Assembly: GCA_002269645.1 (NCBI GenBank)
Contig: NIVC01000262.1
Coordinates: forward strand, 313,412 to 377,411
Direction: 5' to 3'
DNA: 64,000 bases
From: Macrostomum lignano
Taxonomy: Eukaryota
Of this stretch, positions 7,558-64,000 are shown piece by piece; the stretch's first letter is position 1; each line of letters starts with the position of its first letter. The notes beneath the pieces were generated by a model. The model did not search any database and had not been told where the DNA came from. It saw only the letters and a program-made list of their open reading frames with translations. The position numbers and the translations under genes are program-made.

Positions 7558-7590
<33 letters not shown>

Positions 7591-7613
7591 GGGACAGACA
7601 GACAGACAGACAC

Positions 7614-7656
<43 letters not shown>

Positions 7657-7657
7657 C

Positions 7658-7712
<55 letters not shown>

Positions 7713-7715
7713 GGC

Positions 7716-7756
<41 letters not shown>

Positions 7757-20781: not shown

Positions 20782-20854
<73 letters not shown>

Positions 20855-21835
20855 TTTATTCTCCTATTTCCTCTTCTCTCTCCCTGTCTCTCCTCTCTCC
20901 TCTAGTCTCTGTAATCTCTTCTCTCCCATCTTTCTTCTCCTCTCTACTCTCTCCCCTCCATTCTCCTCTTTTCTCTCCTCTCGCCTCACTCACTTCTCTC
21001 TCCCTTTGTCTCTCCTCTCGTCTCTGTAATCTCTTCTCTCTTATCTCTCTTCTGTTCTCTCTATTCTCCCATCTCTCGTCTGTTCATTTTCGTCTCTGCT
21101 CTCAGCTCATCCCCCCTCTTTCATCTGTCATCTTTACTGTCTTAATGTTCTTTCATTTTGTCCTCTGTACTCTTTTCTTTCACCTCTTTTGTCTCCTCAC
21201 TTTCCTTTCTCCTTTCTTCTCTTCTCTTCTCTTCCCTCTTCTATATACTCTCTCCATCTCTTGTCTCGTCTCTTCTCTCTCCACTCTCCTCCTTTATCTC
21301 TCATCTCTCATTTCTCATCTCTCCTTACACCTCTCTCATCTGTACAACTTTATCTCTTCTCTCTTCCATTCTCTCTCTTATCTCTCCTTTCTCCTCTTTA
21401 CTAACTCCTCTCTACTCGCTCCTCTACACTCTCCTCTCCACTCGCTACTCTACTGTCTACTCTCTCCTATCTACTCTACTGTCTACTCTCTCCTATCTAC
21501 TCGCTCCTCTACTCGCTCCTCTACTCTCTCCTCTCTACTCGCCCCTCTACTCGCTCTTCTACTCTCTCCTCTCTACTCGCTCCTCTCTACTCTTTCCTCT
21601 CCACTCGCTACTCTACTCTCTACTCTCTCCTCTCTACTCGCTACTCTACTCTCTCCTCTCTACTCGCTCCTCTCTACTCTTTCCTCTCTACTCGCTCCTC
21701 TACTCTCTCCTCTCTACTCGCTCCTCTACTCTCTCCTCTCTACTCTCTCCTCTCATCGTCCTCACTCCCTCATCTCTCCTATTATCTTTTATCTTTTCTC
21801 TTATTCCCTCTCTCACCTCTCCTCTCTTTTCGAAT
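20365..21835. repeat. CT-rich low-complexity tract with central (CT)n
   Basis: Direct reading; source of the Ser/Leu-rich pseudo-ORFs. Confidence 0.9.
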
Positions 21836-30180: not shown

Positions 30181-30854
30181 TTAGCACCTTGTTCCCTACA
30201 CAACATATATACTTATAGTAAATACAAGTGTTGCTTTATGTAAACAGTTATTAAATGCCTGGGTATCTGGTTTAGATATTAAATTATTATATGCTATATA
30301 TGCATTAATGCTTAAGTCCTATCATGTTAATTAATTGTTTATTTTGTTATACTAATGCTAATACTGCAATCATGTAGCCATTTCAACTGATTCAAAAATG
30401 AACGTTCGAGTTATAGAAGCGATCTATGATTTACACCAAGTGATTGCTCATTCCCAATCATCGTTATGTTTGTACACAAAATCAACTTCTAATTTAATAC
30501 TGTGTGCATGCTTTATCTGTGCGCTTGACGATTTCTTCTTACAAGCTATATCTAAATTTAGTTACATATATAAGGACTCAGTGTAATCTGTGTAAGGACC
30601 CTGAATGAGTTCGTCTTAATTTCTGCTTGAACAAAAAATTATTGCTCACTTGTGCATTGCTGCTTTCCTTTTAATAATAATTCAACTGAAACCCTATTAA
30701 TGAGTGAGCACTTTTGAGTCTGTTGATTTTTTTGTTGGTTTTTTAATTTGTTGTTTTTAGCTGTTAAATTTTAGATTTTTAGAATTTTAGAAATTTTGGC
30801 GCATTACAGCACTGTGCTAGACCACTGGATTACATGTTTAAATGTCAGTTTTAA

Positions 30855-31490
30855 ACGGATGTCAGGTTTCAAGGATGTCAGGTTTCAAGGATGTCAGGTT
30901 TCAAGGATGTCAGGTTTCAAGGATGTCAGGTTTCAAGGATGTCAGGTTTCAAGGATGTCAGGTTTCAAGGATGTCAGGTTTCAAGGATGTCAGGTTTCAA
31001 GGATGTCAGGTTTCAAGGATGTCAGGTTTCAAGGATGTCAGGTTTCAAGGATGTCAGATTTCAGGGATGTCGGTTTCAAGGATGTCAAATTTCAAGAATG
31101 TCAGGTTTCAGGGATGTCAGGTTTCAGGGATGTCAGGTTTTAAGGATGTCAGACTGTAAGGATGTCAGGTTTCAAGGAGTTCAGGTTTCAAGGATGTCAG
31201 ATTTTAAGGGTGTCAGGTTTCAAGGATGCCAGGATTCAAGGATGTCAGATTTCAAGGATGTCAGGTTTCAGGGATGTCAGGTTTCAGGGATGTCAGGTTT
31301 CAGGGATGTCAGATTTCAAGGATGTCAGGTTTCAAGGATGTCAGGTTTCAAGGATGTCAGGTTTCAAGAATGCTAGATTTAAATGGATGTCAGATTTCAA
31401 GGGTGTCAGGTTTCAAGGATGTCAGGTTTCAGGGATGTCAGTTTTCAAGGATGTCAGGTTTCAAGGATGTCAGGTTTCAGGGATGTCAGA
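30855..31490. repeat. 16-bp minisatellite immediately upstream of the CEP85-like ATG
   Basis: Unit caaggatgtcaggttt. Confidence 0.93.
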
Positions 31491-37961: not shown

Positions 37962-40900
37962 ATGTCGATACCCATCGGGCACAATGTCGAATTGAAAGCC
38001 AGCGTGGCCAGTCTGATCGAATTCGTACACGACAGTTTGCACCGGGACGACCTGGGCGACACCGGCGACTCAGCTGGGCAGCAGAATGACTTCTGGGCGT
38101 TGGTCACGCCCGAGATTGCTCAGTCGCGTGAGTGGGGATTTACCGAACGTACTGAACTACTTTGTCAAGTTAGTAGCATCTTTAGGGTTTTACATTTACC
38201 CTTCTAGAAATCAACAAATCCTCTAGCAAAATACGTCTCTAATGCATACAATGTAGTTTACAAGTTCAGTGTTGAAGCCTTCTGGACCCTCATTTGCTGG
38301 GCGACCGCTAAGCCTCCCAGATCCTCAGTTGCTAGGCAAGCTTACCAGATACTCAGTTGCTAGGCGAGCTTACCAGATCCTCAGTTGCTAGGCAAGCTTA
38401 CCAGATCCTCAGTTGCTAGGCAAGCTTACCAGATACTCAGTTGCTAGGCGAGCTTACCAGATCCTCAGTTGCTAGGCAAGCTTACCAGATCCTCAGTTGC
38501 TAGGCGAGCTTACCAGATACTCAGTTGCTAGGCGAGCTTACCAGATCCTCAGTTGCTAGGCAAGCTTACCAGATCCTCAGTTGCTAGGCGAGCTTACCAG
38601 ATCCTTAGTTGCTAGGCAAGCTTACCAGATCCTCAGTTGCTAGGCAAGCTTACCAGATCCTCAGTTGCTAGGCAAGCTTACCAGATCCTCAGTTGCTAGG
38701 CGAGCTTACCAGATCCTTAGTTGCTAGGCAAGCTTACCAGATCCTCAGTTGCTAGGCAAGCTTACCAGATCCTCAGTTGCTAGGCAAGCTTACTAGATCC
38801 TCAGTTGCTAGGCAAGCTTACCAGATCCTCAGTTGCTAGGCAAGCTTACCAGATCCTCAGTTGCTAGGCAAGCTTACCAGATCCTCAGTTGCTAGGCAAG
38901 CTTACCAGATCCTCAGTTGCTAGGCAAGCTTACCAGATCCTCAGTTGCTAGGCAAGCTTACCAGATCTCATGTTGATAAAAATCTCTCCATCCCGCAGTC
39001 TCAAAGCCGGCAACCCCCGAGCCGACAGCTGCAGCTGCTCCAGCAGCAACATCAGCAGCAGCTGTCAATCAGCAGTGCGCTGCCTCGCTTGATGACGATC
39101 TGGACTGTTGCGATCCAGCGCTACGGCCCGCCACTGCCACAGCTGCTGCTGCTGCCGAGACCACCGTAGCTTTCGAGGTTCGTGTACACCCTGTGTGAGC
39201 GTGTGCATGAGTGCCTGCAGTACTGTGTTGGCTCGCTTGTGTGCTCAGTAGTCAGGCGCCGGGGTACAAATGCTAACTGGAGTAACAGTAGCAAAGTGCA
39301 TTCTCCCGCAGCCATTCTATCTGGACAACATTCCATCGTTGCGGCCACATCGAGACCTTCTGAAACTCTTGGCCCACTGGTCGGTGCCTCTGGTTTATCC
39401 TACTGACGCCGAGACGCGCCAAGATGTCGCCATTGTCACCGCGGAAGCTCGCGAGGCTTTGGACTGTCGGATTGCATCCAGGCGGCGCACCAGCCCACCA
39501 GAGCCGCGTAGCAACTGTCCTGACCCAGTTCCACCTGTCCAACTGACAGACGAAGCACAAAATAAGCCAGCAGCAACCGACTCGAACTCAGTAGGCGAAA
39601 TGGATTACGGCGATTTGACTGCTACGCAAATTCGCGACGTGAAAGAAGGCGTCGAGGCTCTTCTAGCCGACTGCAGCTTGAACTTTACACAGAATGTGCT
39701 GGCTGAAAGTGCAGCTAGGCTGGACAGGGACAAAGACCTAACGGATAATGATCTTAGAGACAAAGACCTCGAAGAGGAGGACGAGGACACTAGCTGGCTG
39801 CGAAGTAACATTGGTAAACCTTCCAGCGGTGTGAACAGTGCTTTGAAAAATCCTGCTGGGTTCTGTACAGCCTCAGGCAGATTGGTCAGCTTCTCAGCTG
39901 AGGCCATGCGAAAAGCCAAACAATTGGAGGATGAGGCGGCCAACCATCGGAGCAACGAGAATCTTGCCGAATCTGGTAGGAAATTGTCGCCAGAAAGCGT
40001 CGATATGAAGGGTGGGTTTTCAACCGCCGGTGGTAAATCTTTGCAAGTATCGACGTCCGCTCTGCGTAAGGCGCGGCAGCTAGCCGAGGACGCGGAACTG
40101 GAACCCGTTAGTAACAACAGGCCTGTCAATCAGGGTCCGGCCGGCTTCTCCACCGCAGGCGGGCGTTCGGTTGGCGTTTCAGCTTCGGCGTTGAAGCGAG
40201 CGCAGAAACTGCTTGATGAAGCCGATAAAGACAGTCCCAGATGCAGCTCGGCTGCCACAGCTTCAAGTACTTCTAGTGGCGGGGCTGGCGGCGGCTTCTC
40301 CACAGCGGGCGGTCGGGCTGTGCAGGTATCGGCCAGCGCCATGGCTCGGGCCAAAGCCCTGGCTGCGGCTGCTGAGAATGAGGATTCCGCTCCGGCAAAT
40401 CCTTCGACCAAAGCTGCTCAACCAAGTCCGCAGACTCCGAATGCCATGTCCACTCCCAGACAGCAGATGCCGAGGCCACGGACCACCCCCATGCTGGTGC
40501 AGCATCGGACGCCTCGGCTGAGCACGCCAGTGGGTGGGGCTGCTTCGGCGTCTTCGGCGACTCCGGCTACTAAGGGTGCGTTCTACCGGTTCAAGCCCGC
40601 GCCCTCGCCTGCCGCTGCTCCTCGGCGACAGTTGCAGCCGCAGACTCCGACTGCTCCGACTGCTGCTGCGGTTTGTGTGAACTGCGGGTTACAGATTCTG
40701 TGTTGCTGGGCCTCCATTCTCAGATCCCCAATTGCTGGGCCTCCATTCTCAGGTCCCCAGTTGCTGGGCCCCCATTCTCAGATCCCCAGTTGCTAGGCCC
40801 CCATTCTCAGATCCCCAGTTGCTAGGCCCCCATTCTCAGATCCCCAGTTGCTGGGCCTCCATTCTCAGATCCCTCCAGTTGCTGGGCCTCCATTCTCAGA

Positions 40901-41441: not shown

Positions 41442-41529
41442 GTAAGTGCTTTAACTAGTGGATACTGTTGTTGTCTTGCTTATGTGGGATTGACCGCTTC
41501 TTATATTGTGCGAGCAGATTTAAAATTTG

Positions 41530-43875
41530 TGTCAGTAGATTAATAACTTGTGTCAGTAGATTAATGATTTGTGTCAGTGGGTTTATGATTTGTGTCAGTA
41601 GATTTTTATTTGTGTCAGTAGGTTTATGATTTGTGTTAGTAAAGTAATGATTTATGTCAGTAGGTTTATGAATTGTGTCAGTAAATTAATGATTTGTGTC
41701 AGTAGGTTTATGAATTGTGTCAGTAAAGTAATGATTTGTGTCAGTAGGTTTATGAATTGTGTCAGTAAATTAATGATTTGTGTCAGTAGGTTTATGATTT
41801 GTGTCAGTAAAGTAATGATTTGTGTCAGTAGGTTTATGAATTGTGTCAGTAAATTAATGATTTGTGTCAGTAAAGTAATGATTTGTGTCAGTAGGTTTAT
41901 GAATTGTGTCAGTAAATTAATGATTTGTGTCAGTAAAGTAATGATTTGCGTCAGTAGTTTATGATTTGTGTCAGTAAAGTAAGGATTTATGTCAGTAAAG
42001 TAATGGTTTGTGTCAGTAAGTTTATGATTTGTGTCAGTAAAGTAATTATTTGTGTCAGTAGGTTTATGAATTGTGTCAGTAAAGTAATGATTTGTGTCAG
42101 TAAAGTAATGATTTGTGTCAGTAAAGTAATGATTTGTGTCAGTAAAGTAATTATTTGTGTCAGTAGGTTTATGAATTGTGTCAGTAAATTAATGATTTGT
42201 GTCAGTAGGTTTATGATTTGTGTCAGTAAAGTAATGATTTGCGTCAGTAGTTTATGATTTGTGTCAGTAAAGTAATGATTTGTGTCAGTAAGTTTATGAT
42301 TTGTGTCAGTAAAGTAATTATTTGTGTCAGTAGGTTTATGAATTGTGTCAGTAAATTAATGATTTGTGTCAGTAGGTTTATGATTTGTGTCAGTAAAGTA
42401 ATGATTTGTGTCAGTAGGTTTATGAATTGTGTCAGTAAATTAATGATTTGTGTCAGTAGGTTTATGAATTGTGTCAGTAAATTAATGATTTGTGTCAGTA
42501 GGTTTATGAATTGTGTCAGTAAATTAATGATTTGTGTCAGTAAAGTAATGATTTGTGTCAGTTGTTTATGATTTGTGTCAGTAAAGTAAGTATTTATGTC
42601 AGTAGGTTTATGATTTGTGTCAGTAAAGTAATGATTTGTGTCAGTAGGTTTATGAATTGTGTCAGTAAATTAATGATTTGTGTCAGTAAAGTAATGATTT
42701 GTGTCAGTAGTTTATGATTTGTGTCAGTAAAGTAATGATTTGTGTCAGTAAAGTAAGGATTTATGCCAGTAAAGTAATGGTTTGTGTCAGTAAATTAATG
42801 ATTTGTGTCAGTAGGTTTATGATTTGTGTCAGTAAAGTAATGATTTGTGTCAGTAGGTTTATGATTTGTGTCAGTAAAGTAATGATTTGTGTCAGTAGGT
42901 TTATGAATTGTGTCAGTAAATTAATGATTTGTGTCAGTAAAGTAATGATTTGTGTCAGTTGTTTATGATTTGTGTCAGTAAAGTAAGGATTTGTGTCAGT
43001 AAAGTAATGATTTGTGTCAGTAAAGTAAGGATTTATGTCAGCAAAGTAATGATTTGTGTCAGTAAAGTAATGATTTATGTCAGTAAAGTAATGATTTGTG
43101 TCAGTAAAGTAATGATTTGTGTCAGTAGTTTATGATTTGTGTCAGTAAAGTAATGATTTGTGTCAGTAGGTTTATGAATTGTGTCAGTAAATTAATGATT
43201 TGTGTCAGTAAATTAATGATTTGTGTCAGTAAAGTAATGATTTGCGTCAGTAGTTTATGATTTGTGTCAGTAAAGTAAGGATTTATGTCAGTAAAGTAAT
43301 GGTTTGTGTCAGTAAGTTTATGATTTGTGTCAGTAAAGTAATTATTTGTGTCAGTAGGTTTATGAATTGTGTCAGTAAAGTAATGATTTGTGTCAGTAAA
43401 GTAATGATTTGTGTCAGTAAAGTAATGATTTGTGTCAGTAAAGTAATTATTTGTGTCAGTAGGTTTATGAATTGTGTCAGTAAATTAATGATTTGTGTCA
43501 GTAGGTTTATGATTTGTGTCAGTAAAGTAATGATTTGTGTCAGTAGGTTTATGAATTGTGTCAGTAAATTAATGATTTGTGTCAGTAAAGTAATGATTTG
43601 TGTCAGTTGTTTATGATTTGTGTCAGTAAAGTAATAATTTATGTCAGTAAAGTAATGATTTGTGTCAGTAAAGTAATGATTTGTGTCAGTAGTTTATGAT
43701 TTGTGTCAGTAAAGTAATGATTTGTGTCAGTAAAGTAAGGATTTATGTCAGTAAAGTAATGATTTGTGTCAGTAAAGTAATAATTTGTGTCAGTAAAGTA
43801 ATAATTTATGTCAGTAGAGTAATGATTTGTGTTATTAGAGTAATGATTTGTGTTATTAGAGTAATGGTTTGTGTC
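41530..43875. repeat. 21-bp minisatellite, about 2.3 kb, start of BRCA2 intron 4
   Basis: Unit atgatttgtgtcagtaaagta (the MICVSKV pseudo-ORFs). Confidence 0.96.
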
Positions 43876-44080
43876 AATCGATTGTTTGTTTGTGTCACTA
43901 TCTATGTATTTATTAGTGTTTAGTTACATTTATACAAAGTCGCAACAATTTGATTTCGCATTGTCCAGTTTACATGGTGCAAGGTACTGTTGCGTATAAT
44001 AAGCCTGTTTGATCCCTTTGGTGACAAAAGTACATAAGTTAGTAATTTGACTGTTTAGTTCATAGAATTTGCAAGCTAGA

Positions 44081-47000: not shown

Positions 47001-50000
47001 GCTGTAGATTTATTTAGATTGGTGATCTTTATTTTACAGAGCCTTAAACATTTTAGTAAGTTTTTAGTGTTTTAAGTTAAAATTGTCGCTAACTTGAAAA
47101 CTGTAATCAGACTGATGTTGAATCACCCTTTAGGGCAATGAGAATCACACTTTAGGGCAATGAGAATCACACTTTAGGGCAATGAGAATCACACTTTATG
47201 ACAATGAGAATTACATTTTATGGCAATGAGAATCACCCTTTAGGGCAATGAGAATCACACTTTAGGGCAATGAGAATCACACTTTATGACAATGAGAATC
47301 ACACTTTAGGGCAATGAGAATCACCCTTTAGGGCAATGAGAATCACACTTTAGGGCAATGAGAATCACACTTTATGACAATGAGAATCACACTTTAGGGC
47401 AATGAGAATCACACTTTATGACAATGAGAATCACACTTTAGGGCAATGAGAATCACCCTTTAGGGCAATGAGAATCACACTTTAGGGCAATGAGAATGAC
47501 ACTTTAGGGCAATGAGAATGACACTTTAGGGCAATGAGAATCACACTTTATGGCAATGAGAATCACACTTTAGGGCAATGAGAATGACACTTTAGGGCAA
47601 TGAGAATGACACTTTAGGGCAATGAGAATCACACTTTAGGGCAATGAGAATCACACTTTAGGGCAATGAGAATCACACTTTAGGGCAATGAGAATCACAC
47701 TTTAGGGCAATGAGAATCACACTTTATGGCAATGAGAATCACACTTTAGGGCAATGAGAATCACACTTCAGAGCAATGAGAATGACACTTTAGGGCAATG
47801 AGAATGACACTTTAGGGCAATGAGAATCACACTTTATGGCAATGAGAATCACACTTTAGGGCAATGAGAATGACACTTTAGGGCAATGAGAATCACACTT
47901 TAGGGCAATGAGAATGACACTTTAGGGCAATGAGAATGACACTTTAGGGCAATGAGAATGACACTTTAGGGCAATGAGAATCACACTTTAGGGCAATGAG
48001 AATCACACTTTAGGGCAATGAGAATCACACTTTATGGCAATGAGAATCACACTTTAGGGCAATGAGAATCACACTTTAGGGCAATGAGAATCACACTTTA
48101 GGGCAATGAGAATCACACTTTAGGGCAATGAGAATCACACTTTAGGGCAATGAGAATCACACTTTAGGGCAATGAGAATCACACTTTAGGGCAATGAGAA
48201 TCACATTTTATGGCAATGAGAATCACCCTTTAGGGCAATGAGAATCACACTTTAGGGCAATGAGAATCACACTTTATGACAATGAGAATCACACTTTAGG
48301 GCAATGAGAATCACCCTTTAGGGCAATGAGAATCACACTTTAGGGCAATGAGAATCACACTTTATGACAATGAGAATCACACTTTAGGGCAATGAGAATC
48401 ACACTTTATGACAATTAGAATCACACTTTAGGGCAATGAGAATCACCCTTTAGGGCAATGAGAATCACACTTTAGGGCAATGAGAATGACACTTTAGGGC
48501 AATGAGAATGACACTTTAGGGCAATGAGAATCACACTTTATGGCAATGAGAATCACACTTTAGGGCAATGAGAATGACACTTTAGGGCAATGAGAATGAC
48601 ACTTTAGGGCAATGAGAATCACACTTTAGGGCAATGAGAATCACACTTTATGGCAATGAGAATCACACTTTAGGGCAATGAGAATCACACTTTAGGGCAA
48701 TGAGAATCACACTTTATGGCAATGAGAATCACACTTTAGGGCAATGAGAATCACACTTCAGGGCAATGAGAATGACACTTTAGGGCAATGAGAATGACAC
48801 TTTAGGGCAATGAGAATCACACTTTAGGGCAATGAGAATGACACTTTAGGGCAATGAGAATGACACTTTAGGGCAATGAGAATCACACTTTATGGCAATG
48901 AGAATGACACTTTAGGGCAATGAGAATGACACTTTAGGGCAATGAGAATGACACTTTAGGGCAATGAGAATCACACTTTAGGGCAATGAGAATCACACTT
49001 TAGGGCAATGAGAATCACACTTTATGGCAATGAGAATCACACTTTAGGGCAATGAGAATCACACTTTAGGGCAATGAGAATCACACTTTAGGGCAATGAG
49101 AATCACACTTTAGGGCAATGAGAATCACACTTTAGGGCAATGAGAATCACACTTTAGGGCAATGAGAATCACACTTTAGGGCAATGAGAATCACACTTTA
49201 TGGCAATGAGAATCACACTTTAGGGCAATGAGAATCACACTTTAGGGCAATGAGAATCACACTTTATGGCAATGAGAATCACACTTTAGGGCAATGAGAA
49301 TCACACTTTAGGGCAATGAGAATCACACTTTAGGGCAATGAGAATCACACTTTAGGGCAATGAGAATCACACTTTAGGGCAATGAGAATCACACTTTAGG
49401 GCAATGAGAATCACACTTTAGGGCAATGAGAATCACACTTTAGGGCAATGAGAATCACACTTATGGCAATGAGAATCACACTTTAGGGCAATGAGAATCA
49501 CACTTTAGGGCAATGAGAATCACACTTTATGGCAATGAGAATCACACTTTAGGGCAATGAGAATCACACTTTAGGGCAATGAGAATCACACTTTAGGGCA
49601 ATGAGAATCGCTGCCCTACTGAACTAGTCACTATTGAATATAAAAAAACAGATTAACAATCAAGAGGACAGCTAGACTGTCGGTCAGACCCTCTAAAAAC
49701 AAACGAAGTAACTCACTACATCTCGGCGTAGGTAATCTCCGGCTTGAAGTACTCGTGATCAGCGAGGCACAATTCGAACTCCGGCTGCACAATGCAGTTC
49801 TTTATGTGTCGCACGAAGCAGAACACGATTTCGTCGTGAGGCGGCAAGCCGTCCAGGGTTGACGAGGCGCGCCGACCTCCCGAGGAGCCGGTGTCGTGCG
49901 CGTCGCCTAGGTGAAGGTGCTCAACCAGCCTGGCGCAGCTGCTGTCGGAGCTGCCATCGTCCAGCTGGTTCAGTCCGGCATCCTCTCCGCTCAGGTTTTG

Positions 50001-55392: not shown

Positions 55393-56883
55393 AATACTTA
55401 CATGTAGTTACTTACATATAGTTTACTCAAAACTGTTATTCCTTTCTTTGTTGCGTCACCAACAGAAGGAGCGCAGATTGCTAGTTCCTTAAACACAATT
55501 AACTGCATTCTGAGCAATATAAATGCGACCTAGTAATAAAAGAGAAGTTAAAAGACACTAAGCTACAATCAAGTTTTATAGTTGTCCAAAAATGTAAGGC
55601 TTGAATAAGAGTTGTCAGTCCAAGTTCTGAGTCTCCTTGCCCTCTCCCAACCACCTCCTCATTCTTATGCACTGTCATTATCTCCCATTGAAAAGCAAAC
55701 CGAACAAAATTCAATCCCAAGCCCCTGCAGTCTTCTCCCTTCTATGTATTATTATATACACGCTCGTATATAAATCAGTGCCTCTTTGCAACCAATCAAC
55801 TCTTCGAACCGGTCGAAGCTCTGGAATTTGGTGCCTCCGCATTTTACTTTCTTCTATCTCTATCATTCCTATTCTATTTGAGTCTATACTGCTCAGAATC
55901 CCTATATATCACCCCTCACCATTTGCCTCTGGCCTATTCATTTCCGCCTTATTCTCATTCGGAACTTCACATTCCCCAGTTTCTTATAATTGCTCACTCG
56001 CTCTCTCTCTATCCGATCTAGCTCCTGTTGGTCTCTCTCTCTCTTTCTTTCCCATTTATGGCTCCCCCTCCCAACGATAAGATGGGACAGCGCGAGTTTG
56101 GTGGCTTCAACCTCTATAGCTATGGGCATTTTAATCAAACTGCCAATGCGCTCAAGACTTTCGAATATAGAATCTATATAGTTCTTATAGTATAAGTGTG
56201 AGCGCTATCGATGCCGCGATTGAATGGGTCCTATCTATCTCACTACTGTCTGACACTTTGCCTCCATTCGATTCATTAACCCCCCCTCCCCCATAGCAAC
56301 CCCAAACTTCGTCGCTCGGCTTCTTATCGACAGGCAAATTAATCTTCTCCCTCTACGGCAAGAGAGAAGGACGATCGGTCTTATATGGAACTGGAGCTGG
56401 GATTCTGTGTTTAGCGACTGGGGCCGCTTCATCATCATCTTGTTTAAAGTACCCACTGTCTTAAATTTTCATTTAAAACCAACCAAGTGTAAAAACTATT
56501 ATTCACTTGTTTATATTTTTTCTAGAAAAATTGACAAGAACTTTTCCTGTTAGTCTGTTACAAAGCTGTCTGTTAAAAAATTGAAAATTATATTGTATCA
56601 TTTAGCTTAATGTTATTATAGAGAATAAATAAACTTAAAACAATACTGTATGTTTTACGTACAGTTTTTACTTTAGAAAAAATAATCTTTGTCTCAGTAA
56701 GATATCGCTTAAATTCTAGGATTTCTCGTTCTGTGCAAACAGTTACAAAGTTCTTGTGGGCCGTATTAACGAAGGAGGGCAGTGCTAAACAAAAACTATT
56801 CACAACTTTTAAAAAGTTATTGAAATTCACTGTTATTTGATAATAATAGTTAGGATGCGTCTTCATCATCGGCCATGGTTTCC

Positions 56884-59800
56884 TCACTTGACTGACAGCG
56901 GGTTTCTCTTAGTATTGGCCCTCTCGTTCGTCGGTCTCTGCCGATACTCCACCCCGATGCCGTCCACGACCGCCCGATTCTTGCGCGTCTCCGTCTGGCT
57001 CTCCTCGCCCAGAACCCGGCGACCCTCCTCGCTGACGACCTCCTGCGTGACCGTGAGAAGTTTCAGCATCTTATTAATCTTTAGAATTCTAGCCACCTCT
57101 TTGCAAGCTCTCGTGTCCATTGGCACCTGGCGTAAGAATAGCTTCTCAAGCTTGTTATTAATTTTCAGCGCTTCGGATAGAGAGAAGAAGCAGACATTGT
57201 CCAGGCGGATTCCGCTCAAATCCAGCAGGACAATGGTCCGATTGCTAGAGAATGCGGCGATGAAAGTGTTAAAGGCCATCGCATCAATCTTGAGGTTAGC
57301 CAAGATCAGGCCTTCTAGACTCTTGCTCTCCATCAGCTTTCCGTTGAGATCCTGCGATGCCACTATGCTCATCTGGCAGCCAGAAAAGTCTAGAATGCGC
57401 AGGTTGTCCGCAAATTTAGTTGGCAAATTTTTTATTATGCTTCCAACCAGCGACATGTGGTGACAATTTTGAAATGCGAACGTTTCTAGTTTAGTCATGT
57501 TCGAGCAGGCTTCGCGCATGTTGTTTAGCATTTTTGGCGACAACTGGTCCAGCTTCTTTCCTGACTCGTCGATGCACTCAAGATTCTTCAGATGAAAGCC
57601 GGTCTGATCGGGCTTCTTACGCCTGATTTCCATCTGGCCTGTAGAATTGGCGGGGTCCTCTGGCTCCGGACAGCACACGGTTTGAAGGAAGTCTGCCATT
57701 AGATCCTTCTCTGTCCAGTAGATGCGGAGCGTCTTGATGTGAACGTTCGTTTTCATTGCGGTAGCCAGACTTTTGTATGCCTCAAGCGTCTCTTTGGCTA
57801 GCAGATCTAGGCGCAAGTCCACCTCTTGGATGGTCGTGTGGTTAAACTTGATCATCTTGGACAGGCCTGTAAGCGACAATCTCGGAATGATGCCCTCGTG
57901 CTTCACGGTGAATCGCTCTGGCAGCGATTCAACAATTTTCTTGCCAAGATCTCTGCGGGCCATGTCCATGACCGCCACGCATTCCAGACTGAGCTGGTAG
58001 TCCATGATCTTGCCCTCGACCAGTTGACTGTCTTCTGGCGACGTAGCCGCTGGCATTTTCATGCGACTCGCTTTGCCTCGCCGTTTGTTATACTGCAGTA
58101 TCTTTGCAAACAGTTCCCGGGTGGCCGGCGTGTCGTTGTCCGACTTGCGGATGCTGCAGTAGAACACAACAACATTGTAGGAGATCGGAGTCATACTCAT
58201 GTTCTGGAAGAAGCGGCTAGCTTCATCTGTTCCACTAGTGTCTAGATTTTTCGCGGCGAGATACTCTTGAATAAGACGATTGCCAAACATGTAGCGCTGG
58301 TTATCCTCTGCGGTGAGGTTTGTAGCCAGTTGAATCAGGCCGAACTTAGTCATCATGTGGTCCTCCTTGGCCAAAATGAAAGTTGCGCTGCCTTTCTTTA
58401 TGGTGTCCATAGCGCGTTCGGACAGCATTGCGTAGGCGCGATTCGCTTCGAAGCGACTCTCCTTTTCGCGTTCGATCAGCTTCAACTTGATGCAGGAGAC
58501 AAACTGTTCCACAATTGTTGTCGGAGAGTTCAGATCGATACTCATGCGCATGTCGGTCAGCAGGCAGAAGAACGAACAGTACAAAGGCACCTGTGAGTAA
58601 TGTCGCAGGGACGCTATTTTGCTTTGATTTGAATTTTCACCGTTTGAATCCTGTTGTTGCTGCTGATCGTTTCCTTGACCCTTGCTAGAGCTGCGGCTTA
58701 GTTTTGTGCTGACTTTGTCCGTGTTTTCCCTCTCCAAAGGTCGCTCGTCTCTGGGCTTTGCCGAGGTCACAGATGTCGCCGATTCTGACGACCCGCGTCG
58801 CCTCTGCGGCTCCTGCGACTTTTTCGCTGCATCCAGCAGCTTTTGAAGCTCAGTTGATTTTTTTGCCACTACTAGCTTGTTTAGAAACGAGGAAAAGTGT
58901 TCCCACGGCTTCTTAGCTAGTTTGACGTACTTCTGAACGTACTCCTCTGCCTGGGATTTGGCGAATCCGGTCAGAATTACCTTGCGCTGGTAGCGGTGCA
59001 TCAGTCTGACTGTAAAGTTAGTCTGACTAAATACCAGAATGTGCAGTTCCGGCATGATGTTCTCAAATAGCAAACTCTTCATCTCATCATTTAGATTGTC
59101 TTCGTAGCCATCTATGATGAGCAGTGTGCTCGCCTGGTGCATGTTCATCACCTCCCAAATTTCGCGTTCGGCCAGCTTGCAGTCGCCTCCGAAAAGCTGT
59201 TCCATCATCATCACTTTCACTGTGGGCGCTGTTACTTTAAGATCAAGCAAGATTAGCAGTTGGAAAGGCCGTCCGAATACGTTTTCGTCCAAAGACCATT
59301 TGTAGGCCATATACTTAGCCAGCGTACTCTTCCCTGTTCCAGGGTCACCCTCAATAACTACTGTATGCGGGTCTTTTTCGCCTTCCTTATAATCAAAAAC
59401 TTGGAAGGCGTTGACTGACTTTCTGCAATTTTAAATTGAGAAATCAAAGTTGAAAATTATGTCTTGCTTAATGATCTGATCTGTTTTCCTGCTACTTACC
59501 CATTCAAATTGAGCAGCTGCTGTTGGCAGTAGAATTCGGCAATGTCTGTTTCAACTTTAGTGTACCATGGAATCGGATTCCATTTGGCGTACGCGGTGGA
59601 GTACCGCTCTCGAAGAATGTTGTTACAGTAAGGTAGACCCTCTGAAGAAACAGAAGAAACAGAAAAATCCTGTGATCAACTCTTAGAAGAGGATTTACTA
59701 ATTATTATAAATACTTACGTGGTTTATTAGCAAGGATGTCGGCCTTAGCGGCCTGGTAGTCCTGGTGCATCTGCTGGTACACCTGTTCGTTCTTGGGTTT

Positions 59801-60970
59801 CAGCGATTCAACGAACTCATCCAACACATTGCCAGATTTTGGCACTAGAAAGTCGATCAACGTCGACATCTGCTCGTTGTTGCGCAGAGTAGAAAATATT
59901 TCCGTGCTCTCGTCTTGGGTAATAATCTCCTTGTTCATCAGATGCTCAACCACTGTGTCCGCTTTTACATCGTTGAGCAGCTGTTCGTAGTACTTGTCGA
60001 GAATTAGGCGCTCCGCTAATACCATGCCAGTTTTGATATGAGCCCATCTATGACAGCGCGACTTGTCGCTCATGTCCATCGTCGCCTTTCCAACAACCGA
60101 CTGGCGTTTTTCGTTTCCGACGTGTCCAAATCGCGCGTCTTGAGCCGTTTCTGCAGAATAGGAATCTCTTCGCGCTTCTTCTTTCGTTCTTGGTTTTCGA
60201 TTTCTCTCTTCAACTGGCTGACCTCTTGGCGGTACCAGACGAGGAATTCGCCCAGAATGAAGCGCGATTCAGTCTCGTCCATGCTAGTGTCCTGCTTGTA
60301 TGCGTTCATACAGTCTGCTGCACCCGAGTGTCCCAGTCGCTGGAGCTGCTCGGCAATGCGGCTAAACAGTCTGTTAGCCGCGCTCGCCTTTAAGGTCTGC
60401 AGCGAGGCGAGCTCGCGTTGAATGCCCAGTAGGCGTTGCAGCGCTGCGCCCTGGCTGTCATCGCGAGGTTCCGGATCTCCCATCCAGCCGTTTGGCTGCG
60501 GCTTCGTCACATCGCAGGTGTATTTTACTAACAGGAGCAGCAGACGCAGGTCGTAGTTGTCAGCGGACACGGAAGATTTCTCCTTCGGGTAGAGCGTCTG
60601 CCAGTCGTCTTCGGTTAGCATGTCTTTGATCTTAAGTCGCCTCAGCGTCCGGTGAATGTCCGGCGAGGCCAAGTGTTCCGTTAGCTCGTCCGTTGGATGC
60701 TTGGAATCGAATAGGCTTCTCAAGCACGCCTTGCCCTCTCGCATGAGAAAGTGGCACACTCTGGATAGGTTCTCTACGCTCCTCTCGTCGGTCATGTCCA
60801 ACTGCAGCTTGGGCGTGTTGTCTACCACGCCGAACTGAAATTTTGGATGTCATTAACCAATGTTAAAATGCAGCATTTTAGTAAAGTATCCAACAGTTAG
60901 ACAGTTAGTAACTCACAACCACTTGATTTTTCGGCCGAGCGGCCAAGGTCATTCGACGAACTTCTGGCAT
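56884..60970 (-). CDS. NLR: HEPN(DZIP3-like)-coiled coil-CARD-NACHT-LRR, about 1283 aa if the frame break is repaired; nested antisense in BRCA2 intron 4
   Basis: Exons (-): 60970-60917, 60834-59719 (one base short of phase), 59641-59500, 59422-56884; introns 82, 77, 77 nt. HEPN-like WQTLYP...YDLRLLLLL...GWMGDP...D.S; CARD-like LILDKYYEQLLNDVKADTVVEHLMNKEIIT; pre-NACHT RERY...PIPW; Walker A VVIEGDPGTGKST; Walker B LLIIDGYED; FGNRLIQEYLAA; RI-like LRRs. Confidence 0.85.
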
Positions 60971-61611
60971 CCTCAGCTGTGAGCTGCAGGTTTTCTGTCA
61001 GCTTCTGTTAAGCTCAGATTTCAACTACTCAGATATTGGGCTTTAGTCTTTACTCTAAACTTCTATCTTCGTTAGCAGGTGAAAAAGCATGAAGATTTAA
61101 GAATTTTTCTCTTTCTCTTGCTCTTCTGCTCAAGCGCACTTGCAGCCCAGCCCTCCTTGTTGAGTAGCTCTGGAAAGCTCTGAGCTCTATTGTTAGTCCG
61201 TCTCTTATGCCCTCGACACCCCCGTTAGATTCGAATAGCTCTGTGCTCTGTGCGCTGGAGACATGAAAGCTGTTAAAAGGCGGTGCGCGTTGCGTACTTT
61301 GAATGCATCTGTTCTCAAATATTTTCATTCTACTCTGCAGAGATTTGCTGCGTGTGCAAAGATGTGGCTGTCTACTGTGTTTCTTCTGCTACCATTTTGC
61401 GCTGAGGAGTTTGTCTTATAAGACGCAAAATGGTAGAACAATAAAAATGCTCCTGCGTGTGTACGAGGGGGTCTATTCTATCTTACAGACTCAGTTTTGT
61501 TGCCAAGGTGATGCAACACACTCTCGCGTACACACTTCTACGTACAATGTACTGACCCTCTGTTGCACTTTGTCTCCTGTGGCATATATTTATTGTATAT
61601 TACTTGCACTC

Positions 61612-61890
61612 TGTAGCCAGTGGTTGGAGCGTCGGACTCACGACTTGAAGGTCGGGGGTTCGATTCCTGATCTCACCGGAACGATTTGTGTCCTTTAGCA
61701 AGACACTAAACTCTGCGTTTCTTCAGTTCACCCAGCTGTAAAATGGGTGCCAGCATTAGCTGGGGTAATTGAGGCTGTGTGTGGCGACCCCCCCCCCCAG
61801 GTCCTTGGACTGAACAGCCGTACGCAGCCTTCAGATGCGCCGCGCAATATCTGAGGCTGAGCTGTTGGTTGCACATCTGCCCATTTAGGG
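61612..61890 (+). mobile_element. tRNA-derived CORE-type SINE copy
   Basis: tagccagtggttggagcgtcggactc...ggttcgattcc...tgtgtcctttagcaagacactaaactc...cagctgtaaaatgggtgccagcattagctgggg; collinear with 55122-55392. Confidence 0.75.
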
Positions 61891-62072
61891 CAGGTGTAAT
61901 CAATTATAGTTTTATTATTGTGCTTTATAATTGTCTGAAAGCTGAAAATTTTATTAGCGCACAATTCGTACTTAGGGACAAATTAGCAGAGTCTTGCTCG
62001 AACAATATAAAAATTCGATTTCGGCTCAACAAAATGAACCAAGATATTACTGCTTATTCCTCCATCAACCAG

Positions 62073-63517
62073 ACCCTGCATTCGTCGAATTCTCGAGCGC
62101 GACTCTCCACCCAGCTCGCGTCTAGCACTGCAGGTGGTCAGCCTGCAATGGAGCAGCAACTCGGACAGAACAGAAACTGGAAAGCAGCCAGCGCAACAGC
62201 AGCAGCAGCAGCTCAAGGTTCACTTTGCTGGCTTTGCATTTTATTAGGAAACTCCCGGCTTCTATTCAATCCTTGCTGCCATTGCCCTGTCAGACTGTGT
62301 GTATCCTCCCCTCCCTCTACCTGTTTATGTCTCCCCTCTACCTGTCTGTGTCGCCACTCTACCTGTCTGTGTCTCCCCTCTACCTGTCTGTGTCTTCCCT
62401 CTAGCTGTCTGTGTCTTCCCTCTACCTGTCTGTCTTCCCTCTACCTGTCTGTGTCTCCCTCTACCTGTCTGTGTCGCCACTCTACCTGTCTGTGTCTCCC
62501 CTCTACCTGTCTGTGTCTCCCTCTACCTGCCTGTGTCTCCCCTCTACCTGTCTGTCTTCACTCTACCTGTCTGTGTCGCCACTCTACCTGTCTGTGTCTC
62601 CCCTCTACCTGTCTGTGTCTCCCCTTTACCTGTCTGTGTCTCCCCTCTACCTGTCTTTGTCTCCCCTCTACCTGTCTGTGTCTCCCCTCTACCTGTCTGT
62701 GTCTCCCCTCTACCTGTCTGTGTCTCCCCTCTACCTGTCTGTCTTCACTCTACCTGTCTGTGTCGCCACTCTACCTGTCTGTGTCTCCCCTCTACCTGTC
62801 TGTGTCTCCCCTTTACCTGTCTGTGTCTCCCCTCTACCTGTCTGTGTCTCCCCTCTACCTGTCTGTGTCTCCCCTCTACCTGTCTGTGTCTCCCCTCTAC
62901 CTGTCTGTGTCTCCCCTCTACCTGTCTGTGTCTGGCCGTCTGACAATTGTCTCGCCAGCATTTTTCTCTGCCTATACTATTTACCACTTGCTACTGTTGG
63001 TCAGTAGTTTATAAGCAGCGTGTGATCATTTGACGCATTAATTAGTTTCCCGATTTAGGTGACCCTCACGGACGGCTGGTACTGCATCGGCGCACAGCTG
63101 GATCCCCTGCTGTGCCGCGCAGCCTCCGCCGGCCTCATCAAACCGGGCACCCGGCTGCTCACCTGCCAGGCTGAACTGATTGGCTGCTCTGAGGCCTGCC
63201 AGCCGCTGGAAGCGCCGGCCAGCGCCGCTCTCCGTCTCCATGGCAACAGCACCCGACGCTGCGTTGCCAACCGAAGAGTCCGGCTGGGCTTCGCCGACGC
63301 CTCGCCGATGCCGGTGTCGCTCAGCTCACTGCGGCCCGACGGCGGCAAGGCTGGCGCTCTGCACCTGTTCGTCAGCCGGCGGTACCCCCGGCAGTTCATG
63401 GAGCGCAGCCCTGGCAGCGACGCCAGGGTGTTCCGCGGGGCTCGAGCCGAGGACCGACGGGCCAGGGAGTTCGAGGCTGAGGCCCGCCGGCGAATGGAGG
63501 AAGCTGTGGAGGACCAG
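62073..63517 (+). CDS. BRCA2: BRCA2 exons 5-6 (OB1 and start of OB2/tower; gene continues beyond window end)
   Basis: Exon 62073-62217 (phase 2 in, completing CG|A = Arg; RPCIRRILERDSPPSSRLALQVV) and exon 63059-63517 (VTLTDGWYCIGAQLDPLL...AELIGCSEACQPLEAP...HGNSTRR...LGF...SLSSLRPDGG...RRYPRQFMER). These are the OB1 motifs that directly follow the helical domain in exon 4. Not present in the supplied ORF track. Confidence 0.92.
62310..62932. repeat. 21-bp pyrimidine-rich minisatellite, BRCA2 intron 5
   Basis: Unit ctctacctgtctgtgtctccc. Confidence 0.94.
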
Positions 63518-63529
63518 GTTGGTGGCTGC

Positions 63530-64000
63530 TTCCAGTTGCTGGGCCGCCAGCCTCCCAGATCCCCAGTTGCTGGACCAGACTCCCAGATCCCCAGTTGCTG
63601 GGCCAGACTCCCAGATCCCCAGTTGCTGGGCCAGACTCCCAGATCCCCAGTTGCTGGGCCGCCAGCCTCCCAGATCCCCAGTTGCTGGACCAGCCTCCCA
63701 GATCCTCAGTTGCTGGGCCGCCAGCCTCCCAGATCCTCATTTGCTGGACCAGACTCCCAGATCCCCAGTTGCTGGGCCAGACTCCCAGATCCCCAGTTGC
63801 TGGGCCAGACTCCCAGATCCCCAGTTGCTGGGCCAGACTCACAGATCCCCAGTTGCTGGGCCGCCAGCCTCCAGATCCCAGTTGCTTGGCCAGACTCCAG
63901 ATCCCCAGTTGCTGGGCCAGACTCCCAGATCCTCAGTTCTGGGCCGCCAGCCTCCCAGATCCAACACCGCATCCCAATTTCAGCTGGGCTCCAAGCCCCC
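63530..64000 (+). repeat. CAGATCCCCAGTTGCTGGG-family minisatellite, BRCA2 intron 6
   Basis: Units agactcccagatccccagttgctgggcc and cagcctcccagatcc... Confidence 0.92.

What the first reader, a model, noticed from the sequence alone, without database searches (positions are those of the whole stretch)
56884..60970. NLR with a HEPN-CARD-NACHT-LRR architecture (two N-terminal effector modules)
Seen: a DZIP3-type HEPN-like domain, a charged coiled coil, a CARD-like domain, then NACHT and RI-like LRRs. Known: HEPN(DZIP3)-NACHT-LRR receptors occur in cnidarians, molluscs and amphioxus, and CARD-NACHT-LRR is the NOD/NLRC type. Inference: combining both upstream of one NACHT is unusual and could couple an RNA-binding or RNase-derived module to caspase or RIPK recruitment. 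If the host is a flatworm, a complete NLR would itself be notable.
Basis: partly seen in the sequence, partly recalled or inferred. Interest (0 to 1): 0.75.

Follow-up and report, generated by a model that had tools for sequence, protein, structure and literature searches.

The report
Flatworm copy of conserved HEPN-CARD NLR
This is a real NOD-like receptor gene of the flatworm Macrostomum lignano, but its HEPN-CARD-NACHT-LRR layout is an old, conserved and already catalogued architecture shared with molluscs, annelids, brachiopods, nemerteans and amphioxus, and this copy carries a one-base frameshift that cuts the HEPN part off from the rest.

Summary
The range 56884-60970 is exactly the CDS, in four exons. 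Pfam finds HEPN_DZIP3 (1e-18), CARD (3.5e-10) and NACHT (2.3e-15). The LRRs miss Pfam but are supported by ribonuclease-inhibitor/NLRP sequence matches and by an AlphaFold model that aligns end to end with NLRC4, NLRP3 and NOD2.

The host is Macrostomum lignano. This locus is GenBank gene Mlig026612g1.

Two corrections apply:
- In this copy an A5 run (A6 in five other copies) puts HEPN out of frame. The window encodes a 272-aa HEPN protein plus a 1013-aa CARD-NACHT-LRR protein, which is how GenBank annotates it. I cannot tell a real mutation from an assembly error.
- The architecture is not unusual. Full-length collinear counterparts exist in Lingula, Tubulanus, Owenia, Capitella, Lottia, Haliotis and Mizuhopecten. 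There is also a unit in amphioxus and a fragment in a monogenean flatworm. The literature already lists DZIP3-HEPN fusions to CARD, NACHT and LRR.

New details: across these eight proteins the HEPN lacks its catalytic histidine, and the NACHT lacks the sensor-1 arginine and the winged-helix histidine.

Verdict: a new member of a known kind, of modest interest.

The parts
60917..60970 (-). Exon 1 (54 nt, MPEVRRMTLAARPKNQVV), start codon at 60970-60968
   Evidence: tblastn of the fused paralogue P0001; sequence read; donor GTGAGT at 60916
60835..60916 (-). Intron 0 (82 nt, GTGAGT...TTTCAG)
   Evidence: 84 nt in copies L001/L002
59719..60834 (-). Exon 2: HEPN, long helix, disordered linker and CARD in a single exon. 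It is uninterrupted in the other copies and frameshifted here.
60271..60780 (-). HEPN_DZIP3 domain. The Pfam match covers 60271-60687; the HMM built from the eight proteins extends it to 60780.
   Evidence: Pfam E=1e-18, E=2.5e-17; local HMM; coordinates
60397..60423 (-). Degenerate HEPN active-site position (IQRELASLQ). Canonical relatives have R-N-x4-H here; the His is deleted and the Asn is lost.
   Evidence: alignment of 130 HEPN segments; coordinates
60148..60261 (-).
   Evidence: AlphaFold helix 205-240; invariant columns
60107..60111 (-). A5 run, where copies L001, L002, L004, L005 and L006 have A6. This 1-nt difference shifts the frame inside the disordered linker.
60070..60072 (-). 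TGA that ends the 272-aa HEPN ORF in this copy. It overlaps the next ORF (ATGgacATGA).
60077..60079 (-). ATG of the 1013-aa CARD-NACHT-LRR ORF. This equals GenBank PAA86839.1 (Mlig026612g1).
59762..60001 (-). CARD domain
   Evidence: Pfam E=3.5e-10; Foldseek top hits are all CARDs, with Apaf-1 best
59642..59718 (-). Intron 1 (77 nt, GTAAGT...TTCAG)
59500..59641 (-). Exon 3 (pre-NACHT segment). The position of its 3' boundary is shared with the related contig L003.
59423..59499 (-). Intron 2 (77 nt, GTAAGT...TTGCAG)
56884..59422 (-). Exon 4: NACHT, helical/winged-helix domains, LRRs and the stop codon (56886-56884)
58921..59367 (-). NACHT NTPase domain. Walker A GDPGTGKST is at 59323-59349 and Walker B LLIIDGYED at 59098-59124. 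The sensor-1 position ILVFSQTNF (59014-59040) has Gln instead of Arg.
   Evidence: Pfam E=2.3e-15; motif alignment; coordinates
58618..58827 (-). M. lignano-specific 70-aa low-complexity insertion (Ser/Gln/Lys/Glu-rich) after the nucleotide-binding domain; absent from the seven aligned proteins
   Evidence: alignment; pLDDT<50 at residues 369-431
58252..58290 (-). Winged-helix motif MFGNRLIQEYLAA, with Asn where canonical NLRs have the ADP-contacting His
56962..57915 (-). Ribonuclease-inhibitor-like LRR region, about 11 beta-alpha units, with a 22-26-aa insertion at 57598-57675
   Evidence: PDB sequence matches to RI/NLRP LRRs; AlphaFold secondary structure; Foldseek

Best explanation
The locus is copy g1 of the Macrostomum lignano gene family Mlig026612/Mlig016872. 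This family is the flatworm member of a conserved group of intracellular NOD-like receptors found in spiralians and in amphioxus. Their layout is HEPN(DZIP3-type) - long helix - disordered linker - CARD - NACHT - helical domains - RI-like LRR.

Shown:
- the domain content;
- the four-exon structure;
- a full-length NLR fold;
- collinear counterparts in seven other spiralian species;
- purifying selection between the near-identical M. lignano copies.

Inferred mechanism, by analogy with NLRC4, NOD2 and Apaf-1:
- the LRRs keep the NACHT closed until a cytosolic ligand or stress signal is sensed;
- nucleotide-dependent opening then lets NACHT domains oligomerise;
- this clusters the CARDs, which recruit a CARD-bearing caspase or adaptor by homotypic interaction.

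The HEPN module has lost its catalytic His in all eight proteins, and the Arg is only partly kept. It is therefore most likely a non-catalytic partner: an RNA- or protein-binding or dimerising domain, not an RNase effector.

The NACHT keeps Walker A and B but lacks the sensor-1 Arg and the winged-helix His. Nucleotide hydrolysis or ADP-locking is therefore probably atypical.

In this particular copy a 1-nt shorter A-run in the linker separates a 272-aa HEPN ORF from a 1013-aa CARD-NACHT-LRR ORF. This is either a homopolymer error of the long-read assembly or a recent disabling or splitting mutation in one of at least seven redundant copies.
For: Identity:
- P0001, 99% identical, is named M. 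lignano BOX15_Mlig026612g2.
- The window's CARD-NACHT-LRR model equals P0003 (PAA86839.1, g1) residue for residue.

Domains and fold.

Gene model: two 77-nt introns and one 82-nt intron, all GT-AG.

HEPN and CARD lie in one frame and one exon in:
- the fused products of copies g2, g3, g4, g5 and 016872g2, and a UniRef entry;
- the 36%-identical contig L003 from an unrelated sequencing run.

Counterparts elsewhere:
- An exhaustive HMMER scan of 1.84e9 representatives gives single collinear matches over query residues 26-622.
- The named species are listed.
- All seven spiralian hits have HEPN_DZIP3 + CARD + NACHT in Pfam.

Motifs:
- His-less HEPN motif.
- Walker A/B present, sensor-1 Arg and WHD His absent, while eight other NLRs in the same alignment keep the Arg and seven of them the His.

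Selection: between the window and L001 there are 11 synonymous and 2 non-synonymous substitutions. Only one indel falls in 3.85 kb of CDS, against about 20 in about 4.9 kb of flanks and introns.
Against: - No functional data of any kind. Ligand, partner and oligomerisation are all analogy.
- I did not show that M. lignano encodes a CARD-bearing caspase or adaptor.
- Orthology rests on best hits and collinearity, not on a phylogeny.
- The window's own copy does not encode the fused protein. If the A5 run is real, the main ORF from the first AUG would be HEPN only. The downstream ORF would then depend on inefficient reinitiation, and the transcript might be degraded.
- Copies g4/g5 carry a different 1-nt deletion near the HEPN start, so the HEPN module may be under relaxed constraint in some copies.
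- Loss of the sensor-1 Arg and WHD His could mean the NACHT does not cycle like canonical NLRs.
Confidence: 0.75

Rival explanations
1. The window copy is a genuine split or disabled allele or paralogue. The A5 run is real, so this locus makes a stand-alone HEPN protein, and it makes the CARD-NACHT-LRR protein poorly or not at all. It would be one redundant copy starting to decay, or a natural fission of the two effector modules.
For: - The window is the only one of six compared copies with A5.
- The indel lies in the disordered linker (pLDDT<50, residues 244-279), so both modules stay intact.
- An ATG follows immediately.
- GenBank annotates this copy as 1013 aa.
- Copies g4/g5 and L004 share another 1-nt deletion, at 60760, which removes the N-terminus. 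So HEPN-affecting lesions recur.
- CDS indels are about 15-fold rarer than flank indels, which suggests that many indels in this assembly are real and are selected against.
Against: - It is a single-base homopolymer length difference, the commonest error type in long-read assemblies.
- The same assembly shows about ten indels in 2.2 kb at the contig end L004.
- The remaining CDS is intact and under purifying selection, so any lesion would be very recent.
- No reads were available to check.
Confidence: 0.4
2. The fused HEPN-CARD-NACHT-LRR protein is a gene-prediction artefact that joins two neighbouring genes: a HEPN gene and a CARD-type NLR gene.
For: - In the window the two parts are separate ORFs.
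- GenBank has HEPN-only (P0004) and CARD-NACHT-only (P0003, and Plakobranchus P0033) models.
- The amphioxus model P0018 looks like two tandem genes merged.
Against: - In five other M. lignano copies HEPN and CARD are in one exon with no stop.
- The ORFs in the window overlap by 10 nt and there is no intergenic space.
- Seven species from four phyla show the same order with conserved linker helices.
- A raw Logan contig carries HEPN, helix and CARD as one ORF.
- P0004 comes from an error-ridden contig end.
Confidence: 0.03
3. The HEPN domain is an active RNase effector, as proposed for HEPN-NACHT proteins of oysters and corals. On this view the receptor has two catalytic or signalling outputs: RNA cleavage plus CARD recruitment.
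For: - HEPN_DZIP3 membership is significant.
- The literature predicts RNase or RNA-sensor roles for HEPN-NLRs (PMC3710099, PMC9646362, PMC8662601).
- 194 of 202 Pinctada DZIP3-HEPN proteins keep Rx4-6H (PMC9646362).
Against: - In the alignment of 130 HEPN segments, canonical members show R-N-x4-H.
- M. lignano and all seven aligned proteins lack the His through a short deletion, lack the Asn, and several also lack the Arg.
Confidence: 0.08
4. The frameshift is bypassed by programmed -1 ribosomal slippage on G_AAA_AAC, which would restore the fused protein (…ETKKRQ…).
For: A -1 slip after the AAA codon would reproduce exactly the peptide of the A6 copies (sequence logic).
Against: - The heptamer is not a canonical X_XXY_YYZ site.
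- The 85 nt downstream fold no better than shuffles (z=-1.06; 28 of 200 shuffles fold at least as well).
- The other copies need no slippage, so there is no reason for a conserved signal.
Confidence: 0.02

Closest known systems
Spiralian HEPN-CARD-NACHT-LRR proteins: Lingula anatina XP_013410021 ('NLRC3-like'), Tubulanus polymorphus XP_074650995, Owenia fusiformis CAH1778043, Capitella teleta ELT89336, Lottia gigantea XP_009051454, Mizuhopecten yessoensis XP_021374729 ('NLRC4-like'), Haliotis XP_071116058; also the single Aplysia NLR described in PMC9334734
   Same: - Same domain order, similar length (1098-1240 aa) and a collinear alignment from HEPN to the last LRR.
- Shared invariant residues, e.g. 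the C..P.P.GW loop.
- His-less HEPN motif, and no sensor-1 Arg or WHD His.
   Different: - Only 20-29% identical.
- M. lignano has a 70-aa low-complexity insertion after the NBD and a 22-26-aa insertion in the LRR region.
- It is present as at least seven near-identical copies, whereas the scan returned one such representative per species elsewhere.
- The window copy is frameshifted.
Vertebrate CARD-type NLRs (NLRC4, NOD1/NOD2) and NLRP3
   Same: - CARD-NACHT-HD/WHD-LRR fold.
- Foldseek E 5e-23 to 1e-19 over more than 930 aligned columns, with TM up to 0.64-0.67 on the target.
- Walker A/B present.
- RI-type LRRs.
   Different: - 12-15% identity, and no orthology shown.
- An extra N-terminal HEPN plus helix.
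- The sensor-1 Arg and WHD His are replaced.
- RefSeq names such as 'NLRC3-like' are automatic labels, not orthology statements.
HEPN(DZIP3)-NACHT(-LRR) expansions of bivalves, corals and amphioxus (PMC9646362, PMC8260672, PMC8662601; e.g. Montipora P0016)
   Same: An N-terminal DZIP3-type HEPN fused to NACHT and LRR.
   Different: - Those proteins lack a CARD and belong to large lineage-specific expansions.
- They mostly keep the Rx4-6H motif (PMC9646362).
- They keep the sensor-1 Arg and WHD His.
Apaf-1 / CED-4 apoptosome CARD
   Same: The CARD model superposes best on the Apaf-1 CARD (target TM 0.89, rmsd 1.5 A). Both sit N-terminal to a STAND NTPase.
   Different: - Here the NTPase is NACHT rather than NB-ARC, and the sensor is LRR rather than WD40.
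- CARD identity is only 18-19%. The preference for Apaf-1 over the other CARD hits is slight (TM 0.77-0.89 for most).

Membership tests
Animal NLR (NACHT-LRR receptor, CARD subtype) | Central NACHT NTPase with Walker A (GxxGxGKS/T) and Walker B (hhhhDGxDE) | tested here: met
   Pfam NACHT E=2.3e-15; GDPGTGKST and LLIIDGYED align with other NLRs
Animal NLR (NACHT-LRR receptor, CARD subtype) | C-terminal leucine-rich repeats of the ribonuclease-inhibitor type | tested here: met
   No Pfam LRR hit. RI/NLRP LRR sequence matches at E 1e-6 to 5e-6, about 11 beta-alpha units in the model, and Foldseek alignment through the LRRs of NLRC4/NLRP3/NOD2.
Animal NLR (NACHT-LRR receptor, CARD subtype) | N-terminal death-fold effector domain (CARD) directly upstream of NACHT | tested here: met
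   Pfam CARD E=3.5e-10; six-helix bundle matching Apaf-1, caspase-9, NLRC4 and ASC CARDs
Animal NLR (NACHT-LRR receptor, CARD subtype) | Conserved nucleotide-sensing residues: sensor-1 Arg and winged-helix His | tested here: not met
   Gln at sensor-1 and Asn at the WHD His position. The same loss is seen in all seven aligned proteins. Eight other NLRs in the alignment keep the Arg, and seven of them keep the His.
Animal NLR (NACHT-LRR receptor, CARD subtype) | Ligand-triggered, nucleotide-dependent oligomerisation and CARD-mediated recruitment of a partner | not testable with these tools
   Needs biochemistry or cell biology
HEPN superfamily, DZIP3/hRUL138 family (PF18738) | Significant match to the family profile over its full length | tested here: met
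   67.9 bits against a cutoff of 27, profile positions 2-140 of 144
HEPN superfamily, DZIP3/hRUL138 family (PF18738) | Rx4-6H catalytic motif (with Asn after the Arg) | tested here: not met
   IQRELAS--L where canonical members have YYRNTVYG-HA. The His is deleted in all eight proteins of the group.
HEPN superfamily, DZIP3/hRUL138 family (PF18738) | RNase or RNA-binding activity | not testable with these tools
No PDB match was found for the HEPN part of the model.
Spiralian HEPN-CARD-NACHT-LRR group of proteins | Same Pfam domain order in all members | tested here: met
   Seven of the seven top full-length hits; M. lignano fused copies
Spiralian HEPN-CARD-NACHT-LRR group of proteins | Collinear full-length alignment, including linkers and the C-terminal region | tested here: met
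   Single HMMER stretches over query 26-622; MAFFT alignment with about 50 invariant columns spread along the protein; C-terminal HMM E down to 1e-211
Spiralian HEPN-CARD-NACHT-LRR group of proteins | Monophyly or reciprocal best hits (true orthology) | not tested
   Only forward best hits were obtained. No tree was built. The word-indexed searches failed to retrieve the family.
Spiralian HEPN-CARD-NACHT-LRR group of proteins | The window copy itself encodes the uninterrupted protein | tested here: not met
   A5 versus A6 frameshift; the HEPN ORF stops at 60072-60070

The most novel reading that the evidence does not exclude
These proteins may be an ancient NLR, kept at one gene per species in Spiralia (and perhaps Bilateria), that works differently from the expanded immune NLRs. 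It would combine a pseudo-RNase HEPN as a regulatory or RNA-binding head, an Apaf-1-like CARD, and a NACHT lacking the sensor-1 Arg and WHD His. Flatworms, including at least one parasitic monogenean, would have kept it while losing other NLRs. That would make it the main CARD-based death or inflammasome-like platform of the phylum. The M. lignano copies would then show early stages of module fission, with HEPN separated from CARD-NACHT-LRR.
Probability: 0.15. Interest if true: 0.55.

Novelty: new member of a known kind. Interest (0 to 1): 0.3.

Why it matters
- It shows that at least one free-living flatworm keeps a complete NLR. Flatworms are a phylum usually discussed without NLRs, and one survey counts zero NACHT genes in Schistosoma. 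M. lignano is also a transgenic, RNAi-amenable model.
- It places that NLR in a conserved spiralian family whose HEPN has lost its RNase signature. This sharpens what experiments to do on 'HEPN-NLRs': look for binding or regulation rather than RNA cleavage.
- The value is incremental. The protein, its domains and the architecture are already in public databases and papers.

Tried and rejected
1. Intron joining the HEPN and CARD frames. I enumerated all GT/GC...AG pairs that keep the ORF open. There were 412 candidates, none with a credible donor or polypyrimidine tract comparable to the real 77-82-nt introns. Rejected.

2. The search for homologous proteins (word-indexed), run three times: with the full protein, with the eight-sequence alignment A1, and with the N-terminal alignment A3.
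   - The searches returned essentially only the M. lignano cluster or nothing, and did not even recover the seven known counterparts.
   - The 8000-candidate pre-filter seems to be swamped by P-loop, LRR or low-complexity words.
   - The taxonomic distribution therefore rests on the exhaustive HMMER scan plus name look-ups.

3. Second frameshift in copy Mlig016872g1 (P0004, HEPN-only), considered as independent evidence for selected 'fission' alleles. Rejected, because that copy lies in the last 2 kb of its contig and has about ten CDS indels. It is a low-quality end or a decayed copy.

4. Programmed -1 frameshifting. No stimulatory structure was found.

5. Foldseek for the HEPN part. The hits were dominated by the CARD, with no PDB match for the HEPN domain.

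6. Literature. There is no paper on Mlig026612 or on Macrostomum with NACHT. Zhu et al. 2022 (Gene 843:146807), on lophotrochozoan NLRs, is not held and may already describe this group of proteins.

7. A second copy inside the window. None was found.


Full report
**What is at the coordinates**

The feature lies on the minus strand. Six-frame translation of 56700-61400 shows a HEPN-like ORF, a CARD ORF in another frame, and a long NACHT-LRR ORF. Reading the DNA gives two canonical 77-nt introns (GTAAGT...YAG) at 59718-59642 and 59499-59423. These join the CARD exon, a 142-nt exon and the 2.5-kb last exon into an intact 1013-aa CDS. A first 54-nt exon (ATG at 60970) is joined through an 82-nt intron to the large second exon, which starts at 60834.

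**Domain check**

- Pfam gives HEPN_DZIP3 E=1e-18 (profile positions 2-140 of 144), CARD E=3.5e-10 and NACHT E=2.3e-15. All are above the gathering thresholds.
- No Pfam LRR model hits. However, the last ~150 residues match ribonuclease inhibitor and NLRP LRRs in a PDB sequence search, at E about 1e-6 to 5e-6.
- An AlphaFold2 model of the CARD-NACHT-LRR protein was built with a nine-sequence alignment. It has mean pLDDT 77.7 and pTM 0.73, and shows about 11 beta-alpha repeat units.
- Foldseek aligns that model over more than 930 columns with autoinhibited NLRC4 (E=5e-23), NLRP3 and NOD2.
- A second model covers the N-terminal 392 residues (pLDDT 79). It shows an all-helical HEPN region, one long charged helix (residues 205-240), a disordered linker (244-279) and a six-helix bundle. 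Every top PDB match for that bundle is a CARD; the best is Apaf-1, with target TM 0.89 and rmsd 1.5 A.
- The observation therefore holds.

**Organism and database status**

A 1283-aa protein that is 99% identical is 'hypothetical protein BOX15_Mlig026612g2 [Macrostomum lignano]'. Its precomputed Pfam domains are HEPN_DZIP3, CARD and NACHT. Its 90%-identity cluster holds:
- g2/g3 (1283 aa);
- g4/g5 (1235 aa);
- g1 (1013 aa);
- Mlig016872g1 (224 aa, HEPN only);
- Mlig016872g2 (1292 aa);
- a UniRef entry of 1283 aa.

The g1 protein equals my spliced CARD-NACHT-LRR model residue for residue. The window is therefore the g1 locus of assembly GCA_002269645.1.

**The frameshift**

- The fused copies read ...DTSETKKRQSVVGKATMDMSDKS... 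The window reads ...DTSETKNASRLLERRRWT* in the HEPN frame, and MDMSDKS... in the next frame.
- At DNA level the window is 99.2% identical to the g2/g3 loci over 9 kb.
- The only indel in the 3.85-kb CDS is A5 (60107-60111) against A6. About 20 indels, mostly in homopolymers, lie in roughly 4.9 kb of flanks and introns.
- All five other copies compared have A6.
- No credible intron can bridge the two frames.
- The downstream RNA shows no frameshift-stimulating structure.
- The lesion sits in the disordered linker. The window therefore encodes an intact 272-aa HEPN-helix protein and an intact 1013-aa CARD-NACHT-LRR protein, whose ORFs overlap in ATGgacATGA.
- I cannot decide between a homopolymer error and a real, recent mutation.
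  - The same assembly has an error-ridden copy at a contig end: L004, with about ten CDS indels in 2.2 kb.
  - Against that, g4, g5 and L004 share a non-homopolymer 1-nt deletion at 60760. That deletion truncates the N-terminus and looks inherited.
- Between copies the CDS is under purifying selection: 11 synonymous against 2 non-synonymous substitutions versus g2, and 13 against 6 versus 016872g2.
- Two copies lie about 38 kb apart in the same orientation on one contig.

**Is the architecture unusual?**

It is not.
- I ran an exhaustive HMMER scan of 1.84 billion representative proteins with residues 1-640. It returned 1062 hits at E<=1e-3. The best hits are single collinear matches spanning HEPN, CARD and NACHT (query residues 26-622) at 24-29% identity.
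- Name look-ups identify them as Lingula anatina, Tubulanus polymorphus, Owenia fusiformis, Capitella teleta, Lottia gigantea, Mizuhopecten yessoensis and four Haliotis species.
- All seven representatives have HEPN_DZIP3, CARD and NACHT in the same order. Four of them also have weak LRR_6 hits.
- They align with the M. lignano protein from the first HEPN helix to the last LRR.
- Domain HMMs built from that alignment classify 17 of the 176 proteins held as HEPN-CARD-NACHT-Cterm. They also pick up further cases:
  - an amphioxus model with an embedded HEPN-CARD-NACHT unit (P0018, confirmed by Pfam);
  - a sea-slug CARD-NACHT-Cterm model (P0033);
  - a 441-aa HEPN-CARD fragment from the monogenean flatworm Cichlidogyrus casuarinus (P0082, 24% identity over 317 aa);
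  - a raw contig from run ERR14224706 that carries HEPN-helix-CARD as one ORF. It is 36% identical and ends at the same exon boundary as in M. lignano.
- The literature agrees:
  - Anantharaman et al. [quoted passage not shown]
  - Tassia et al. 2021 found N-terminal HEPN domains in NLRs of nine invertebrate taxa (PMC8662601).

**New details seen here**

- *HEPN active site.* In an alignment of 130 DZIP3-type HEPN segments, canonical members show R-N-x4-H. M. lignano and all seven aligned proteins lack the His through a short deletion and lack the Asn, and several also lack the Arg. The HEPN is therefore predicted to be non-catalytic.
- *NACHT motifs.* Walker A and B are kept. The sensor-1 Arg is replaced by Q/E/K/N/P/H, and the winged-helix His is replaced by Asn (Cys in molluscs), in all eight proteins. 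Eight other NLRs in the same alignment keep the Arg and seven of them keep the His; they come from fish, a bat, corals, amphioxus and a Capitella paralogue, and the NLRX1 sequence is the one lacking the His.
- *Insertions.* M. lignano has a unique 70-aa low-complexity insertion after the nucleotide-binding domain and a 22-26-aa insertion in the LRR region.

**Mechanism**

Shown: an NLR fold with a CARD immediately upstream of the NACHT, preceded by a conserved but His-less HEPN.

Inferred from established NLRC4, NOD2 and Apaf-1 biology:
- LRR-mediated autoinhibition;
- activation-dependent oligomerisation;
- CARD clustering, followed by homotypic recruitment of a CARD caspase or adaptor.

The HEPN most likely acts as a binding or regulatory module rather than as an RNase. 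The atypical NACHT residues suggest altered nucleotide handling. None of this is tested.

**Flatworm angle**

A survey figure counts 0 NACHT genes in Schistosoma mansoni (PMC9646362). A planarian immunity review mentions NLRs only generically. I found no paper on a Macrostomum NLR. A complete flatworm NLR is therefore mildly notable, and the Cichlidogyrus fragment suggests retention beyond Macrostomum. But it is already deposited and domain-annotated, and Zhu et al. 2022, which I could not read, may cover it.

**Verdict**

It is an already catalogued, conserved architecture rather than an unusual combination, and this copy is frameshifted. I rate it a new member of a known kind, with interest 0.3.

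Noticed in passing
window 14672-16318 (-): A single 548-aa ORF matches the amiloride-sensitive sodium channel family (Pfam ASC, E=1.3e-38) over the whole profile. It looks like an apparently intronless DEG/ENaC gene.
   Followed up: partly
window 39270-40796 (+): A 508-aa ORF has four BRCA2 (BRC) repeats (Pfam E=1.5e-31). It is probably an exon of the M. lignano BRCA2 homologue.
   Followed up: partly
window 8455-9012 (-): An ORF with a uDENN domain (E=5e-15), probably one exon of a DENN-domain gene.
   Followed up: no
whole window, e.g. 41525-43876, 47120-49609, 6790-7809, 20391-21831, 62313-62933: The window has an extreme density of minisatellites: 51 TRF rows with score >=200, with units mostly 16-42 nt and up to 113 copies. 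One unit family (~CCAGATCCTCAGTTGCTGGGCC, 28-31 nt) recurs at 6044, 35774, 38310, 40702 and 63532 in both orientations. The long 'ORFs' at 61779-63014 and 63396-63972 are translated repeats.
   Followed up: partly
window 30891-31376 (+): A Pfam 'pentapeptide repeat' hit (E=2e-17) lies on a 16-nt tandem repeat (30842-31489). It is a translation artefact, not a gene.
   Followed up: yes
L005/L006/L004, at the position equivalent to window 60760: Copies g4, g5 and 016872g1 share a 1-nt, non-homopolymer deletion near the start of the HEPN domain. This explains why their annotated proteins start at Met49 (MREGK...). It is a second HEPN-affecting lesion in this gene family.
   Followed up: partly
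L004 (NIVC01000870.1, last 2 kb of the contig): About ten single-base indels fall within 2.2 kb of CDS at a contig end. This indicates locally poor consensus quality in the assembly, or a decayed copy. It is relevant to how far single-base frameshifts in this assembly can be trusted.
   Followed up: partly
L008 and L004 (NIVC01000870.1, 270.7 kb and 308.4 kb): Two copies of the NLR gene lie about 38 kb apart in the same orientation on one contig. Part of the copy number is therefore tandem or segmental duplication, not only allelic or homeologous redundancy.
   Followed up: no
P0015 (Haliotis protein of the same architecture), Walker A: The abalone protein has GAPGIGQTT, with the Walker A lysine replaced by Gln. 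Nucleotide binding may be lost altogether in that lineage.
   Followed up: no
window 58618-58827 (-): There is a 70-aa Ser/Gln/Lys/Glu-rich disordered insertion between the NACHT nucleotide-binding domain and the first helical domain. It is unique to M. lignano among the eight aligned proteins.
   Followed up: partly
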